A stretch of DNA of 62,981 bases, filler included, from Octopus bimaculoides (lineage: Eukaryota): the NCBI RefSeq assembly GCF_001194135.2. It is 4 parts of 4 records of this genome, joined end to end, with 100 filler letters (N's around TTAATTAATTAA, not from the genome) between each part and the next. Parts side by side here need not be neighbours in the genome. Positions count along the whole stretch, not along the records: positions 13,701 to 38,431 come from NC_068987.1; 3 more parts are not named here. One strand, written 5' to 3'. The notes beneath the pieces are model-generated. The model had not been told where the DNA came from. It was given only the letters and a program-made list of their open reading frames with translations, and ran no database searches. The position numbers and the translations under genes were made by a program. Below are positions 17,064-28,870 of the stretch, one piece after another; the stretch's first letter is position 1; every line of letters begins with the position of its first letter.

Positions 17064-17258
17064 GTGCAATGGTACAATTACTTGGCTGATGCAAAATACC
17101 ACCTTCCTTATGAGAAAGACACTATAGCTTTTACTATTATTGGTCGACCTGATATGTTTGAGAAAGCTTTTAAAACATTCGTATGTAATAGAACCAGCAA
17201 GCCACTTGTTGATATTGACTACAAGTTTATCATGTTTTATATGAAGAAGATCCAACAG
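17064..17258 (+). CDS. MMACHC: MMACHC/CblC-like paralog A, coding exon equivalent to human exon 2 (VQWYNYLADAKYHLPYEKDTIAFTIIGRPDMFEKAFKTFVCNRTSKPLVDIDYKFIMFYMKKIQQ)
   Basis: Acceptor ctctggttgcag|GTG, donor CAG|gtaagc. 195 nt, phase 0/0, the same length as human MMACHC exon 2. By-eye match to human [31 protein letters not shown] (recalled). Confidence 0.9.
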
Positions 17259-18289
17259 GTAAGCTTTTGAACATAACCCAAGAGTTAATCTAAACTCAAG
17301 CCAAATTTTCAATACAGAATGATAGAATGACAAAACTGCATATACACGCATCTTTGATCCATTTAACCGAAAGAAAGCCTCTCGACTGACTGGCAAAGTC
17401 TCATTCCAGCATAAACGCACAGTGTTTCACCCTCTCTATATATCTGTGTTCTTTTTTTTTATCACTATTAAAACAATATTTGTTCCTTGGGAACAAGCTA
17501 GATGCATGACATCTCTGCATAACCCTACCGAGCATAAATGTTTTTCTTCCCCATCTCCTCACCTCTACAGTGTCTCACATCCGGCACTCATACAAATATG
17601 TAACAACGATAAAATAATAATGACATAATGCAGAGGAGAAATGACTAAAGCAGAATAGTTGCTTAATTATCAATACGGTCATTTATTAAGTTGATTATGA
17701 TATATATTCGTTACAATATATAAGAAATATACAACGTCGTCGCGTTGTTTGTGTATACACATTGTTTGTAGTTGCAGTAAAATATATTCTGGTTCCATGG
17801 TTCATTCTATGATTGGAGAAAAGATCTGAGAGGTCAACTCAATCTCATTAATTTCTGAGTGCAGGACTGAGACAATAGACCGAATACTTGCTTGACAATA
17901 TGGAGAAATGTGGATTTGGTCTCGAATCCTAGCTTAGCTGTTCTGTAGCTGTTCGCTACAAATATTTTCCTTACAGTCTTCCCTCTTCAGATCTTCGACC
18001 GTCTTGAATTCTTTTCATACTCATATTTTACTACAAAACTTGAACATCAGCCGTATAGAGTTCATTAAACTCGAAGGATTTGTGAAGAACATCAAGCTAT
18101 AGTCCCTTGACCCGAATTATAATAATTATTTTTTTTTATCTCCTTGCGTTTATCCCGCTTTGTGTAAGGCCTGCTCGCTTTATTATTGCAACTGAGATGT
18201 TGCTCTAATCGACGCATCACACTGTCTGACAGCAGAGAGATATATCACCGTTCCGAGCCCAGCACTTATTTCCGTTTTAACTTTAGTAC

Positions 18290-18555
18290 TTATTCTATCG
18301 GTCGCTTTTTAACGAACCGCTAGTTCATTGGGACATAAACAAACCAAGAACAGTTGTTAAGCGATGGGAGTAATACAACACAAACACACATACATAGATA
18401 CACGCGCGCGCGCGCATATATATGACAGGCTTCTTTCAGTTTTCGGTTACCAAATCCTCTCGTAAGGCTTTGGTCAACCCAGAGTTATAGTAGAAGACAT
18501 TCGCACAGAGTGACGCGCACTGGAATTGAACCAAAGATTACATGACTGGAAAGCA
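18290..18555 (-). mobile_element. SINE family B, degraded, in the intron between copy A exons 2 and 3
   Basis: gcttctttcagttttcggttaccaaatcc..aaggctttggtcaacccagagttatagtagaagaca. Confidence 0.65.
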
Positions 18556-18640
18556 CCCCACACCCCAGTCACGTCCGTGCCTGTTGTGTCAATAAATTCA
18601 ATTGATTCTTTTTTTTTTTTTTTTGCTGCAATGGTTTCAG

Positions 18641-18784
18641 GAATACAACAACGTCGATATTATTCTCAGAAACGTACGTGGACATCACAGCAATCTTAAT
18701 ACCAATATAGCCGCACACGTCACAGGTGTTGCTTACCGATATACTCAATCTGATGTCCTGCATTATACTTGGCCAAAGACAAAG
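18641..18784 (+). CDS. MMACHC: MMACHC-like paralog A, exon equivalent to human exon 3 (EYNNVDIILRNVRGHHSNLNTNIAAHVTGVAYRYTQSDVLHYTWPKTK)
   Basis: Long poly-T tract, then tggtttcag|GAA; donor AAG|gtatgt. 144 nt, phase 0/0. AAHVTGVAYRY...DV...W matches human AAHVAGAAYYY...DV...W. Confidence 0.88.
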
Positions 18785-19415
18785 GTATGTAGACATAACC
18801 GATTCTTGTTGATCGATAATTTTTCCTATAAATTACGCAAATGTACTTGCATAGCAAGTGAGATGCAGCACGAAGTTTTGTCAATGAACAAGTCGCGGTT
18901 TCAAAACGACGAAAATATTTTAATACAAATGAAATTTAAATGTTGAAGACTAACTATGGGTTTTTGTGTGTTCTTTGAATGGCTTGCAAACATCTTCCAC
19001 CGCTGCAACATGCTCGTACACACAAACCTATGTGCGTGCACACATTCACACACACACACATATACATGTATATATTATTTCATTGAAGCCGAAAAAAAAA
19101 AGAAAAGAACTCCACACACTCTTGCTCACAGTTTCACTTAGCCGTTCATCAAGCTGTTGTGATAAATCAAACTACTCTGAGTAACAGTCTGTAAAGTATA
19201 TTTATTCTTTGGACTCCAGTAAAGTAGCATTTTACTCCACCTTTAATATTCGAGTACTATTCTTTCCCATTTTGTTTTGCGCCTATGGGCTCACCTGCGT
19301 GTTAGAGAGAGTGAAATTCGAATCATAGGTATGTCAGTTCATTATAGAAAATATAACAGAAAAGTCCAATTCTTCCATTGCATGTAACACGGGCAACGCC
19401 GGGTATCTCTGCTCG

Positions 19416-19475
<60 letters not shown>

Positions 19476-26169: not shown

Positions 26170-26424
26170 TTTTCATATAATACATCACCAGTAAAAATCC
26201 GGTATACGCAATTCAGGTAGTATTTAATTAAAACAGTCATATATGTATCATATTTAAAGTCGATAGGACAGCTACTACAGTATTTTACCTGAGTTAACAT
26301 CTCTAATGGACTTGCTGTGTTAAAAATAAAATAAAATAAATATTAGAGAGAGACGAAAATTCATCTCAGCAGCAGAGTGTGGGAGCGTTAAGTGCATTTC
26401 GGACACAAGTGCATCTTTCTTTTA

Positions 26425-26610
26425 TCATTTACTTGTTTCAGTCATTAGACTGCAGCCAAACTGGGGCACTGTCTTGAGCTTTTAGTCGAATGGATGAATC
26501 AGCCCCAGTACTTTTTCTATCGGCATTTTTGACGAACCGCTAAGTTACAGGGAGGCAAACACATCAGTACCGGTTGCCAAGCAGTGGTGGTGGTGGGGGA
26601 CAGACACAAA
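26425..26610 (-). mobile_element. SINE family B, 3' half
   Basis: tttacttgtttcagtcatt..gaaccgctaagttacagg..ggttgccaagcagtggtgg. Confidence 0.7.
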
Positions 26611-26754
26611 CACACACACACACACACACACATTTATACATGCATATATGTAAGTATAGTCGTCACTGAAGTGACGGAGGGTGCTAGTCAGCACCAGCAT
26701 TGCTAGAAATAAGAGTTAAAACAACTCTTAGCTACATGAGAACACTTTTCTAAC

Positions 26755-26920
26755 AGTCGGTCCCAAAACTAATCAGTTCGTGTCAGTCATGAGGCCAAAC
26801 ATCTCTGAAAGTTTCATCCGAATCCACCCAGCGGTTCTTGAGATATCTTGTCCACGGACAAACAAACAAACAAACACGACTGTAAACAATACCTCCACCT
26901 TCGCTGAGGCGGAGGTAATA
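26755..26920 (+). mobile_element. Helentron/DINE-like non-autonomous element 3' end
   Basis: (CAAA)n tract followed by terminal hairpin acctccacct-tcgctg-aggcggaggt and taataa; this architecture is typical of DINE-1/HINE elements. Confidence 0.45.
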
Positions 26921-28663
26921 ATAATAATCATAATTTCTTATATAACGAAAAGATGGATTTAGTATTAATCTTTATTTTGTACAACGCTCGTTTCGACCCA
27001 TCCTGCTACTGTCTCTTATGGGTGGGACTCCTTTTCACCATGTTGTGTTGCATCAATTTCGCAGTCTGGGTTTCATCAGGTACATAAAAGTTTGTGTCTC
27101 GCTAAAGATCCTGAGTTATGGCTGTCATGTTGTTCTATGCCCATCTAGTTAGGGAATGAAGCATCGCTACAATATTCTGTTACTATTATCTTTTTCAATA
27201 AGTGTTGCAAACACTTGTAAATATAATAATTGTTGATTAAAAAAATAAGTCAGTAGGGGAAATTAATAGAAGAGTAGGGATGGATTGAATTGTTGCAGGC
27301 GTAAAATTTCATTAAAAGATATCCTTTTTTTCTGAAAGTTATGATGGAAAAAATCGGATCGTGTGAATTTTCCAAATGTTCTCTCTCCACATTCGTTTGC
27401 GCAAATCTTGGTTTTCATATTCGTTTTCTACACGTTTTTTTTTTTACACCTATTAGACTATTTTTTTTTTTTTTTCGTTTTGGTGACCGGGCGCTAAACT
27501 AGATCCTGAAAGTTAAGGGTGAATAAAACGGATTGTGTGAACTTTCCGACAGTCCTCTCCCCACCCCTTCGGAAAAAACATTTTCAAGCATCTTAACTAT
27601 TGTCAGTACTGGATACCAAGTGCGACAACTCTGAAATGACTTGGAATTGCCTGAAACAAGAATTTTTCTCCATGGCAAAATGTAGTGGAAACGGTCTTTT
27701 TACCAGTCAAATGTTTCAAACATATTTGGATTAATCTGAAAGTTTGTTGATTCCACAGCACAGCTTCGTGTCTCTACTATATAATCTGCATAGTCTGAGC
27801 ATGAAAGAAAGAGCCAAGAGACTGAAATTTTGGGAAAGAAGGATTGGGTGTAAAAAAAATTGGTGTTTGGACTGAAGCGTACAGATATTGGCAAAGGAAA
27901 TATAAAATTATCTACGAGTCGTTTTTTTGTTTGGTTCTTGCGTCAGTTCAGTCATGATTGAGCCGAATTATGCTCCAGATGTGAGCATCCCGGTCATTTT
28001 TTCCCCCAGAAACAATGTATCTAGATCACCCTGATCCAGTGTCCCTCCACTATTTAGGTGGTATGGAAATTTGGTTACTATTTCTGACAGGTCGAGTGAC
28101 CAAGTATAGGCTCCCTTTTTATTAAACTTTAATGTAGATGTAGTTAGCCCTTTTATATGATTAAGGACATTCTAGCTGTGACTATAATGTCAACATAAGA
28201 ACATACTATCAGATACGCTTTTTTTTAAAGCACGATTGGGTATTATTTAACCTTTTATCAGTCTTGTGTATCATATGTGATATATTTTCCCGGTGTCCTG
28301 CATCATACTTGATACACATTCCCAATTCTTTTCAACCGTTAGAGTAACTTGGGAACTAATGAAAGGAAAGATTGCTATTACTCAGAACAAGGATTAACTA
28401 AAAGTCTGGAAACAAGCATGGACATTTAGGACAAACTTATGAAAATGCTTTGGACAAGCAGGCTTAAGCGAGATCCATCTGCTGTTTCTGAAGGTCCAGC
28501 AAATACATAATAAACTTTTATGGAAAAACAAAATGGGAAAATTGTGACGTCCATGCTGCTTTTTGTAAAGTTAACTGATTTTTATCAATGAATTGGTTTC
28601 AGTCTAAACACCCCACCGATGAACAGAGCACTAATCGTAAATGTGAAATATTTAGAGACTTAC

Positions 28664-28870
28664 AGCAAAGAATTTCTTGAAATACTTTTGGTTACAGTTA
28701 TCAGTCGGGTCCCCGTCTAGGAGAACGGTAACATTTGATTCACAAATACATGGAATCAATGTTTTCTCGAACATATCTGGTGCTGCAACAACAGTTAGGG
28801 CCAGTGTATTTTTAGGGTAATTCAAGCGGAACATTCGTTTCATTGATTTAATTTCGTTGTAGCATCTCAC
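28664..28870 (-). CDS. MMACHC: MMACHC-like paralog B, exon equivalent to human exon 2 (VRCYNEIKSMKRMFRLNYPKNTLALTVVAAPDMFEKTLIPCICESNVTVLLDGDPTDNCNQKYFKKFFA)
   Basis: Minus-strand acceptor ttcttttatccag|GTG, donor GCT|gtaagt. 207 nt, phase 0/0. YNE, TLA, PDMF and DPTDNC match human YNE, TLA, PAMF and DPVDQC. Confidence 0.9.

What the first reader, a model, noticed from the sequence alone, without database searches (positions are those of the whole stretch)
17064..28870. Tail-to-tail pair of highly divergent, intact MMACHC (CblC) paralogs
Seen: two genes with three open coding exons each (235 and 232 aa without exon 1), GT-AG boundaries, and phase-0 introns at the human MMACHC positions. They converge on one N-free stretch. 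By eye the terminal exons are only about one-third identical to each other, yet they share features absent from the human protein (P[AG]VIVF, KLP, AK.YFS, VK..K..C). Established: MMACHC is a nitroreductase-fold cobalamin chaperone with decyanase and glutathione-dependent dealkylase activity, and to my knowledge it is usually single-copy in animals. Inference: an old genomic (not retroposed) duplication with both copies kept under selection, i.e. a derived CblC-like subfamily that I do not know to be described.
Basis: partly seen in the sequence, partly recalled or inferred. Interest (0 to 1): 0.85.

Follow-up and report, generated by a model that had tools for sequence, protein, structure and literature searches.

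The report
Octopus-specific divergent B12-chaperone (MMACHC) gene copies
Two real, intact, tail-to-tail copies of the vitamin-B12 chaperone gene MMACHC belong to an old three-gene cluster found in octopuses besides the normal MMACHC gene, and both have lost residues the normal enzyme needs for its glutathione chemistry, so they probably do something different.

Summary
The piece is Octopus bimaculoides chromosome CM046607.1 (100% identical). Gene A lies on the + strand (exons 17064-17258, 18641-18784, 21295-21663). Gene B lies on the - strand (28870-28664, 25580-25431, 22523-22182). Both are open, with AG/GT phase-0 introns at the human MMACHC positions. Both match Pfam MMACHC and are modelled confidently as the MMACHC fold. 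They are 33% identical.

- A canonical MMACHC with the full arginine triad lies on another chromosome.
- A and B belong to a trio: A converges on B, and C lies upstream of B on B's strand.
- The convergent A/B pair is also seen in Argonauta; the position of its C-like gene is inferred only.
- Octopus-Argonauta dN/dS is about 0.12-0.17.

A, B and C share Arg161->Pro and Arg206->Ala, two of the three glutathione-binding arginines. B keeps the cobalamin-contact residues. A has also changed Gln131 and Gly147, and in Octopus it has lost the ancestral exon 1.

All three genes are already RefSeq models named as ordinary MMACHC. I found no paper describing them. Function is untested. Most likely they are neofunctionalised cobalamin-binding paralogues. 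Relatives with signal-peptide-like leaders (one is from a cuttlefish) and an excess of glycosylation sequons hint at a secretory role. I rate this a new variant of a known kind, of moderate interest.

The parts
17064..17258 (+). Gene A (XP_014782766-8) coding exon 2, 65 codons, VQWYN...KKIQQ
   Evidence: AG acceptor and GT donor, phase 0. 100% match to P0001/P0024. Homologous to human exon 2 (c.82-276), which is also 195 nt.
18641..18784 (+). Gene A coding exon 3, 48 codons, EYNNV...NIAAHVTGVAYRYTQSDV...WPKTK. It holds the altered cobalamin-contact motif (Gln118Asn, Thr119Ile, Tyr129Arg, Gln131Thr).
   Evidence: AG/GT boundaries, phase 0. Residue table.
21295..21663 (+). Gene A terminal coding exon, 122 codons plus TGA. 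It carries Gly147Glu, Arg161Pro and Arg206Ala, keeps Arg230, and ends in a hydrophobic C-terminal tail ...FTYFFKHILPAFMPILGCCM.
   Evidence: The tail is conserved in character in O. vulgaris and Argonauta A.
21664..22181 (.). A 518-bp spacer between the two convergent stop codons, containing a (CATA)n/(TTTA)n microsatellite. Poly(A) signal motifs lie on the + strand at 21725 (ATTAAA) and 21833 (AATAAA), and on the - strand ending at 22058, 22050 and 21795. The two 3' UTRs must therefore abut or overlap.
   Evidence: motif scan only; no transcript data. The same spacer is about 2.3 kb in Argonauta and 5-7 kb in O. vulgaris.
22182..22523 (-). Gene B (XP_014782765.1) terminal coding exon, 113 codons plus TAA. 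It carries Arg161Pro and Arg206Ala, keeps Gly147 and Arg230, and has the C-terminal Cys (KKYC).
25431..25580 (-). Gene B coding exon 3, 50 codons, with an intact cobalamin-contact motif ILSQTAAHVSGAAYYYQRRDV.
28664..28870 (-). Gene B coding exon 2, 69 codons, VRCYNEIKSMK...KKFFA.
   Evidence: Exon 1 (MFASELITILTVFNAILYQYGYEAQPFA, GT donor) lies 13 kb upstream, outside the piece.

Best explanation
The window holds two members (A and B) of an octopod-lineage cluster of three MMACHC-derived paralogues. A converges on B, and C lies upstream of B on B's strand. These genes exist in addition to the canonical cobalamin chaperone gene, which sits on another chromosome.

Shown:
- Both are complete, spliced-type genes with the MMACHC fold.
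- The convergent A/B pair predates the Octopus-Argonauta split; Argonauta also has a C-like gene, whose position in the cluster is inferred only.
- The genes have been under purifying selection since that split.
- A, B and C have replaced two of the three arginines (Arg161->Pro, Arg206->Ala) that anchor glutathione in human MMACHC.
- B and C keep every tabulated cobalamin-contact position except Ser146, which also varies among canonical proteins. A has in addition changed Gln118, Thr119, Tyr129, Gln131, Gly147 and Gly156. In Octopus, A has also lost the ancestral first exon.

Inferred mechanism:
- B (and C) still bind cobalamin in the MMACHC pocket. They no longer carry out the canonical glutathione-dependent dealkylation or reduction. 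They would act as a cobalamin binder, carrier or store, or as a processing enzyme with a different co-substrate or compartment.
- A is a ligand-switched or non-catalytic derivative (a pseudoenzyme or regulator), kept because of a new role.
- The canonical gene supplies the housekeeping CblC activity.
For: Identity and fold:
- Pfam MMACHC scores 132 bits for A and 193-201 bits for B.
- The AlphaFold2 model of A has pLDDT 88.8 and pTM 0.81. The model of the O. vulgaris B orthologue has 94.6 and 0.90.
- Foldseek top hits are all MMACHC. A matches 3som with E=3e-15 and TM 0.78. B matches 7wuz with E=5e-25, TM 0.85/0.91 and rmsd 1.6 A.

Separate canonical gene: P0197 lies on CM046602.1 and keeps Arg161, Arg206 and Arg230.

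Cluster and age:
- O. bimaculoides has A(+) at 75.079-75.089 Mb, B(-) at 75.089-75.109 Mb and C(-) at 75.123-75.134 Mb.
- O. vulgaris has the same three genes.
- Argonauta has a four-exon intact A convergent with a B-like gene, and a C-like gene with the next protein accession.

Selection: Octopus-Argonauta dN/dS is 0.17 for A (pN 0.25, pS 0.68, p=6e-22) and 0.12 for B and C. Amino-acid identity is 57-63%, against 55-56% for the canonical gene.

Residues: the table at human positions, read against PMC9464900 and PMC11910325, which report that the arginine triad binds GSH and is conserved from Trichoplax to man, and that Gln131 and Gly147 are cobalamin-binding residues.

Shared derived states of A with B/C at otherwise conserved sites: four, including both arginines. 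A shares one with the signal-peptide-type relatives, and B/C share two.
Against: - No biochemical or expression data exist here.
- Arg161 is not universal in invertebrates. Oysters, P0016 and the signal-peptide-type relatives have Asp or Gly there, so its loss alone need not abolish activity.
- Recent constraint is weak. O. bimaculoides-O. vulgaris dN/dS is 0.71 for A (not different from 1, p=0.34) and 0.48 for B (p=0.02). However, the canonical gene gives 0.70 over the same distance.
- In the O. vulgaris assembly both A copies are structurally disturbed: one by a ~220-bp insertion in exon 4, the other by an inversion that separates exon 2 from exons 3-4.
- Distance trees do not resolve A+B/C monophyly (bootstrap 30-62%).
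Confidence: 0.65

Rival explanations
1. The paralogues are ordinary isoenzymes. A, B and C would be tissue- or stage-specific copies that still carry out the standard CblC reactions (decyanation, dealkylation), with only their expression subfunctionalised.
For: - The fold and, in B and C, the cobalamin-contact residues tabulated here are intact apart from Ser146->Tyr/Phe, a position that also varies among canonical proteins.
- Arg230 is kept.
- O. vulgaris B and C and the Argonauta B/C-like genes have an Arg two residues before the lost Arg161 (GGWVRFPGV), which might substitute for it.
- Other molluscs also lack Arg161.
- RefSeq names them as the enzyme.
Against: - Arg161 and Arg206 substitutions are pathogenic in man and impair GSH binding, coupling or solubility (PMC9464900).
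- The triad is conserved from placozoans to mammals (PMC11910325).
- O. bimaculoides B has Ser, not Arg, at the putative compensating position.
- A has Gly147->Glu and Gln131->Thr at positions cited as cobalamin-binding.
- N-terminal hydrophobicity and sequon content differ systematically from canonical proteins.
Confidence: 0.2
2. The copies are decaying. One or both genes would be on the way to becoming pseudogenes, and the open frames would be a transient state.
For: - For A, the ancestral exon 1 is degraded in O. vulgaris: 2-nt and 3-nt gaps and no ATG.
- The RefSeq models use a non-homologous first exon.
- Pairwise dN/dS of 0.71 is not distinguishable from 1.
- Both O. vulgaris A copies are structurally disrupted.
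Against: - Exons 2-4 of A are open with canonical splice sites in O. bimaculoides, O. vulgaris and Argonauta. Exon 4 is also open in a further unnamed relative, P0002.
- Long-term dN/dS is 0.17.
- The A-specific substitutions are identical in all three species at nearly every tabulated position. This is fixation, not drift.
- The canonical gene shows the same short-range dN/dS.
- For B there is no sign of decay at all.
Confidence: 0.1
3. The pair is an assembly or annotation artefact, for example haplotigs, a mis-join or chance ORFs.
For: - The older scaffold has many N gaps outside the gene pair.
- The O. vulgaris region contains near-identical duplicated segments that could be haplotypic.
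Against: - The pair lies on one N-free stretch.
- That stretch is 100% identical to the chromosome-scale assembly.
- The copies are only 33% identical.
- The same arrangement occurs in independent assemblies of O. vulgaris and Argonauta.
Confidence: 0.01

Closest known systems
Human MMACHC / CblC (PDB 3SC0, 3SOM, 7WUZ; Pfam PF16690)
   Same: - Same fold: TM 0.78-0.94.
- Same exon-intron structure.
- B keeps His122, Tyr129, Tyr130, Gln131, Gly147 and Arg230.
   Different: - Arg161->Pro and Arg206->Ala in A, B and C.
- A also has Gln131->Thr, Gly147->Glu, Tyr129->Arg and Gly156->Ala.
- The genes sit in a lineage-specific cluster beside a separate canonical orthologue.
- B and C have a hydrophobic N-terminal helix, extra cysteines and N-glycosylation sequons.
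Canonical octopod MMACHC (O. bimaculoides P0197 on CM046602.1; O. vulgaris CAI9717092.1; O. sinensis XP_036356450.1; Argonauta GAB1604734.1)
   Same: Same family, same species and a similar rate of protein change: 55-56% Octopus-Argonauta identity against 57-63% for the paralogues.
   Different: - It keeps the whole arginine triad and every cobalamin-contact position tabulated except Ser146.
- Its Pfam score is 246-264 bits, against 201-212 for B and C and 133 for A.
- It has 0-1 sequons and 1-2 cysteines.
- It lies on a different chromosome.
Cuttlefish 'MMACHC' (Sepia/Acanthosepion pharaonis CAE1172260.1) and unnamed transcript-derived relatives (P0196, P0198, P0199, P0204, P0047)
   Same: - Shared Tyr/Phe-Gly in place of the usual Pro after YFS.
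- Shared C-terminal Cys followed by an extension, and the NKT sequon before the IYG strand.
- Sequon excess; Arg161 lost; Pfam score about 200 bits.
   Different: - The full-length transcript-derived members (P0196, P0198, P0199, P0204) carry an added N-terminal signal-peptide-like leader. The Sepia model and P0047 appear to lack their 5' ends.
- They keep Arg206 and have Asp or Gly rather than Pro at 161.
- Only the Sepia protein is named by a source. The other five are unnamed, so calling them decapodiform is an inference from similarity.
- Orthology to the octopod trio is unresolved (bootstrap 30-62%).
C. elegans CblC (5UJC) and Trichoplax CblC
   Same: They are invertebrate MMACHC homologues with altered redox behaviour. 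Trichoplax, like B, has Tyr at human Ser146 (PMC11910325).
   Different: They are the sole CblC of their organisms. Trichoplax CblC retains the arginine triad (PMC11910325); I did not check the triad in C. elegans CblC.

Membership tests
MMACHC / CblC family (Pfam PF16690) | Sequence match above the curated Pfam threshold | tested here: met
   A scores 132 bits and B 193-201 bits against a cut-off of 27.
MMACHC / CblC family (Pfam PF16690) | MMACHC fold (nitroreductase-like core plus cap) | tested here: met
   AF2 pLDDT is 88.8 for A and 94.6 for the B orthologue. The 20 best PDB matches are all MMACHC/CblC, with E down to 5e-25 and TM up to 0.94.
MMACHC / CblC family (Pfam PF16690) | Ancestral gene structure (phase-0 introns before Val28, after Glu92 and after Gln143) | tested here: met
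Catalytically canonical CblC (decyanase / GSH-dependent dealkylase) | Glutathione-binding arginine triad Arg161, Arg206, Arg230 | tested here: not met
   A and B have Pro161 and Ala206 and keep only Arg230. The role of the triad is taken from PMC9464900 and PMC11910325.
Catalytically canonical CblC (decyanase / GSH-dependent dealkylase) | Cobalamin-contact residues (Gln118, Thr119, His122, Tyr129, Tyr130, Gln131, Gly147, Gly155, Gly156, Trp157) | tested here: inconclusive
   B meets this: all are conserved. A does not: it has Asn118, Ile119, Arg129, Thr131, Glu147 and Ala156, identical in three species.
Catalytically canonical CblC (decyanase / GSH-dependent dealkylase) | Measured cobalamin binding and processing activity | not testable with these tools
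   This needs recombinant protein and UV-visible or LC-MS assays.
Orthologue of animal MMACHC (the housekeeping gene) | Being the copy that retains ancestral residues and the ancestral locus | tested here: not met
   A separate gene on CM046602.1 (P0197) keeps the triad and scores higher to the family profile. Synteny of that locus with MMACHC neighbours in other animals was not tested.
Secreted MMACHC-like proteins (signal-peptide type; one named cuttlefish member) | N-terminal cleavable signal peptide | tested here: inconclusive
   The full-length transcript-derived relatives have a typical n/h/c leader added before helix 1. B and C have no added leader, but helix 1 itself is hydrophobic: the maximum 12-residue Kyte-Doolittle score is 1.7-2.5, against -0.02 to 1.2 in canonical proteins. 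The -3/-1 pattern is not typical. No signal-peptide predictor was available.
Secreted MMACHC-like proteins (signal-peptide type; one named cuttlefish member) | Excess of N-X-S/T sequons and added cysteines | tested here: met
   Octopod A/B/C have 28 sequons against 13.2+-3.3 expected (0 of 500 shuffles reach it). The signal-peptide type has 21 against 5.4. Canonical proteins have 1 against 2.3 and 3 against 9.8. B has 6 Cys against 1 in the canonical octopod protein. The sequences are related, so the counts are not independent.

The most novel reading that the evidence does not exclude
Coleoid cephalopods turned the cytosolic B12 chaperone MMACHC into a family of secretory-pathway (extracellular, lysosomal or membrane-associated) cobalamin-binding glycoproteins.

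- The cuttlefish protein's closest relatives carry a signal peptide.
- Octopods expanded the lineage to three clustered genes (A, B, C) that dropped the glutathione site, which would be useless outside the cytosol.
- B and C would be B12 carriers or scavengers analogous to transcobalamin or haptocorrin.
- A, with its remodelled pocket and hydrophobic tail, would bind a different ligand or act as a membrane-tethered partner.
Probability: 0.2. Interest if true: 0.75.

Novelty: new variant of a known kind. Interest (0 to 1): 0.5.

Why it matters
MMACHC is treated as a single-copy housekeeping enzyme whose arginine triad is conserved from placozoans to man. Here a long-lived, selected gene cluster has discarded two of those arginines, and in one member the cobalamin contacts as well. 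It is a natural experiment on which parts of the protein serve binding and which serve chemistry.

It also points to unexplored B12 handling in cephalopods, possibly extracellular. All three genes currently carry the enzyme's name in RefSeq, so functional annotation transferred from human MMACHC is probably wrong for them.

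Tried and rejected
- **Exon 1 inside the piece.** I searched with tblastn, motif regex, exact peptide and DNA similarity to O. vulgaris and found nothing. Both first exons lie outside the piece. The blastn run returned mostly microsatellite matches.
- **A third copy in the window.** None was found. Gene C lies about 14 kb beyond B's first exon.
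- **Ancestral exon 1 of A in O. bimaculoides.** It was not found. A 1.1-kb N gap sits where it is expected.
- **Distance (NJ) trees with bootstrap.** These strongly support the A clade, the B/C clade, the canonical octopod clade and the signal-peptide-type clade. The order between those clades is unresolved (30-62%). I therefore do not claim that the duplication predates the octopod-decapod split, and I did not file the oyster 'Asp161' genes with the cephalopod paralogues. The first tree script timed out.
- **Pairwise dN/dS between Octopus species as a pseudogene test.** This is uninformative, because the canonical gene gives the same value as A.
- **Look-ups of the O. vulgaris and O. sinensis canonical proteins P0012 and P0029.** Both failed. 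I used isoform P0073 instead.
- **The weak Pfam GH97_N hit on A** (21 bits, below its cut-off) was rejected as noise.
- **A CaaX or Rab-type prenylation reading of A's C-terminal ...GCCM** was rejected, because the motif is absent in O. vulgaris, Argonauta and P0002.
- **Cysteine pairing in the models** could not be checked, because model coordinates are not exposed.

Full report
**What is in the sequence.**
The usable piece (13701-38431) is AT-rich eukaryotic DNA. From 13701 to 31663 it is 100% identical to Octopus bimaculoides chromosome CM046607.1, assembly GCA_001194135.2.
- Gene A, + strand: 17064-17258, 18641-18784 and 21295-21663 (the last includes TGA).
- Gene B, - strand: 28870-28664, 25580-25431 and 22523-22182 (the last includes TAA).

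Every internal boundary is AG...GT and every exon is a multiple of three. The frames give 235 and 232 residues. No N run interrupts the pair.

Both products match Pfam MMACHC far above threshold: A at 132 bits (E=2.8e-38) and B at 193 bits (E=5.5e-57).

Aligned to human MMACHC, the three introns fall before Val28, between Glu92 and Ser93, and between Gln143 and Arg144. These are the human exon boundaries, as shown by the human splice variants c.81+2T>G, c.82-1G>A, c.276G>T and c.277-3_303del (= p.Ser93_Gln143del) in PMC9464900.

**Completeness of the genes.**
Neither first exon is in the piece.
- B's exon 1 (MFASELITILTVFNAILYQYGYEAQPFA, GT donor) is homologous to MMACHC exon 1. It lies 13,012 bp upstream of exon 2, at window-equivalent 41883-41966.
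- For A, the RefSeq isoforms start either with a short non-homologous exon (MYALHCSQFRFIFIRSKVY, window-equivalent 12408-12464) or further inside the gene.
- In Argonauta hians, A has a normal homologous exon 1 and four intact exons with canonical splice sites. The deposited model there is truncated.
- In O. vulgaris, only the 3' half of that exon survives, with its GTAAGT donor. It carries 2-nt and 3-nt gaps and has no ATG.
- In O. bimaculoides, a 1.1-kb assembly gap sits where the remnant would be.

So A in Octopus has very probably lost the ancestral N-terminal helix and strand.

**Relatives and genomic context.**
Protein searches and cluster look-ups show four MMACHC-family genes in O. bimaculoides:
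- A = XP_014782766/7/8
- B = XP_014782765
- C = XP_014782776, a third paralogue 68% identical to B
- a canonical MMACHC (P0197, partial model) on a different chromosome, CM046602.1

On CM046607.1 the order is A(+) 75.079-75.089 Mb, B(-) 75.089-75.109 Mb and C(-) 75.123-75.134 Mb.

O. vulgaris has the same three genes plus a canonical gene on another chromosome. Argonauta hians has A convergent with a B-like gene, a C-like gene with the adjacent accession number, and a canonical gene on another contig. I did not fetch the locus of the Argonauta C-like gene, so its place in the cluster rests on that accession order.

C-terminal tails pair the Argonauta genes with B (short tail) and C (long amphipathic tail). 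The trio therefore predates the Octopus-Argonauta split.

An exhaustive profile search of 1.84 billion representatives found nothing outside octopods that scores close to the trio. Scores were 260-476 bits for octopod members, and 225 bits or less for everything else.

**Selection.**
Over the deep comparison (O. bimaculoides against Argonauta), synonymous sites are near saturation (pS 0.68-0.72) while pN is 0.23-0.25. This gives dN/dS of 0.17 for A and 0.12 for B and C, with p<1e-17 against equality. Protein identity is 57-63%, no lower than the canonical gene's 55-56%.

Between Octopus species, pairwise dN/dS is higher: A 0.71, B 0.48, C 0.38-0.48. But the canonical gene gives 0.70. This short-range measure therefore cannot separate function from decay.

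I conclude that both window genes have been maintained by selection for most of their history. For A in the genus Octopus the recent state is uncertain.

**Structure and key residues.**
AlphaFold2 models are confident: A has pLDDT 88.8, and the O. vulgaris B orthologue has 94.6. Their only significant PDB matches are MMACHC/CblC structures.

At the positions characterised in the human enzyme, with their roles taken from PMC9464900 and PMC11910325:
- Canonical octopod proteins keep Arg161, Arg206 and Arg230 and every tabulated cobalamin-contact position except Ser146, which is Tyr or Phe there and in most other canonical proteins.
- A, B and C all have Pro at 161 (Leu in one Argonauta gene) and Ala at 206. 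Arg230 is kept in O. bimaculoides A and B and in most, but not all, of the other A, B and C sequences.
- B and C keep Gln118, Thr119, His122, Tyr129, Tyr130, Gln131, Gly147, Gly155, Gly156 and Trp157 (one Argonauta gene has Phe at 157).
- A has Asn118, Ile119, Arg129, Thr131, Glu147 and Ala156, identical in O. bimaculoides, O. vulgaris and Argonauta.

At sites that are at least 85% conserved in 21 non-cephalopod MMACHCs, A carries about 42 derived states, B/C 25 and the canonical octopod gene 15. A and B/C share four exclusive derived states, including both arginine losses. Pfam scores give the same ranking: canonical 246-264, C 212, B 201 and A 133 bits.

**Most likely mechanism.**
The steps shown are the fold, the retention or loss of named residues, the conservation of the cluster, and selection. 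The steps inferred are these:
- B (and C) still bind cobalamin but cannot use glutathione as the canonical enzyme does.
- A no longer binds cobalamin in the canonical way.
- The unlinked canonical gene provides ordinary CblC activity.

Caveat: Arg161 is also replaced (by Asp or Gly) in oysters, in an unnamed sequence (P0016) and in the signal-peptide-type relatives. Its loss alone is therefore not proof of lost activity. The loss of Arg206 is, in my sample, unique to the octopod trio.

**A lead towards something newer.**
The cuttlefish 'MMACHC' (Sepia pharaonis CAE1172260.1) and five unnamed transcript-derived relatives form a well-supported clade. The four full-length members carry typical signal-peptide-like leaders in front of helix 1. 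Only the Sepia protein is named, so the decapodiform origin of the others is inferred from similarity.

They share several features with the octopod trio: a C-terminal Cys followed by an extension, Gly in place of the usual Pro after YFS, and an NKT sequon.

N-X-S/T sequons are in excess:
- Octopod trio: 28 observed against 13.2 expected.
- Signal-peptide type: 21 against 5.4.
- Canonical proteins: 1 against 2.3, and 3 against 9.8.

These counts are not phylogenetically independent.

Helix 1 of B and C is as hydrophobic as those leaders, although it lacks a typical cleavage pattern and is modelled as packed on the fold. This fits, but does not show, a move of this lineage into the secretory pathway, where a glutathione site would be useless. 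Orthology between the signal-peptide type and the octopod trio is not resolved by my trees.

**Comparison with what is known, and novelty.**
The genes are members of the MMACHC family by sequence, fold and gene structure. They fail the test for a catalytically canonical CblC (the arginine triad, and for A also the cobalamin contacts), and they are not the housekeeping orthologue.

They are already gene models in RefSeq and GenBank under the enzyme's name. Full-text searches found no paper that mentions MMACHC paralogues in octopus or other molluscs.

I rate this a new variant of a known kind. It is of moderate interest (0.5): real, old and selected, with a clear biochemical prediction, but without functional data.

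**Side observations.**
- The two stop codons are only 518 bp apart, with poly(A) motifs of both strands interleaved, so the 3' UTRs abut or overlap.
- In O. vulgaris the cluster is partly duplicated. One copy has the segment [A exon 3, A exon 4, B exon 4] inverted between two oppositely oriented FAM200/ZBED5-like transposase genes. The other A copy has a ~220-bp insertion in exon 4.
- The window also holds SINE-like repeats and LINE-like ORFs.

Noticed in passing
Outside the window: O. bimaculoides CM046607.1 75,123,025-75,134,314 (locus L007 10001-21290): A third clustered paralogue, C (XP_014782776.1, 269 aa). It is 68% identical to B, lies on B's strand about 14 kb upstream of B's first exon, and has a basic amphipathic C-terminal tail. 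The pair is really a trio.
   Followed up: yes
O. vulgaris OX597820.1 58.63-58.91 Mb (L001-L004; e.g. L002 8372-9571(+) and 23781-25598(-)): The cluster is partly duplicated. In one copy the segment holding A exons 3-4 and B exon 4 is inverted relative to O. bimaculoides, between two inverted FAM200/ZBED5-like (hAT-type) transposase genes. In the other copy, A exon 4 has a ~220-bp insertion (L001 29769-29991). This is either real rearrangement or an assembly flip.
   Followed up: partly
Proteins P0042 (Sepia pharaonis CAE1172260.1), P0196, P0198, P0199, P0204, P0047: MMACHC-like proteins related to the cuttlefish protein. The four full-length ones have signal-peptide-like N-terminal leaders, and all have 3-8 N-glycosylation sequons. 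P0047 has 8 in 214 aa. Only P0042 is named by a source. This looks like a secreted MMACHC derivative.
   Followed up: partly
Proteins P0214 and P0241 (Crassostrea virginica), P0016 (unnamed): The oyster has two MMACHC genes. Both have Asp at human Arg161, and P0214 has Gln at Arg230. P0016 shows the same Asp161 and Gln230 pattern. The arginine triad is therefore not universal in molluscs.
   Followed up: no
L008 (O. bimaculoides) against L009 (O. sinensis): The canonical MMACHC itself shows a pairwise dN/dS of 0.70 between the two Octopus species (40.5 nonsynonymous against 13.5 synonymous differences). This is unexpectedly high for a housekeeping gene.
   Followed up: no
window 13713-13914, 18415-18555, 20849-21050 (also about 26420-26581 and 37964-38133): Copies of a ~200-bp SINE-like interspersed repeat. 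The arms at 13713-13914 and 20849-21050 are 92% complementary. One copy lies in intron 3 of gene A, just upstream of its last exon.
   Followed up: no
window 29605-31636 (-) and 35072-37364 (-): Long open frames typical of non-LTR retrotransposon remnants in intron 1 of gene B. They include a gag-like ORF with a CCHC zinc knuckle (Pfam zf-CCHC, 22.7 bits) and stretches that look like reverse transcriptase and endonuclease by eye. N gaps interrupt them.
   Followed up: partly
window 21996-22117 and 37412-37552: A (CATA)n/(TTTA)n microsatellite lies inside the 518-bp spacer between the two stop codons. A long trinucleotide (AAT/ATT-type) repeat lies further out.
   Followed up: no
window 32006-32605 (-): A 200-codon open frame rich in Thr and Asn runs, with no Pfam match. 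It is probably low-complexity or repeat-derived sequence in intron 1 of B.
   Followed up: no
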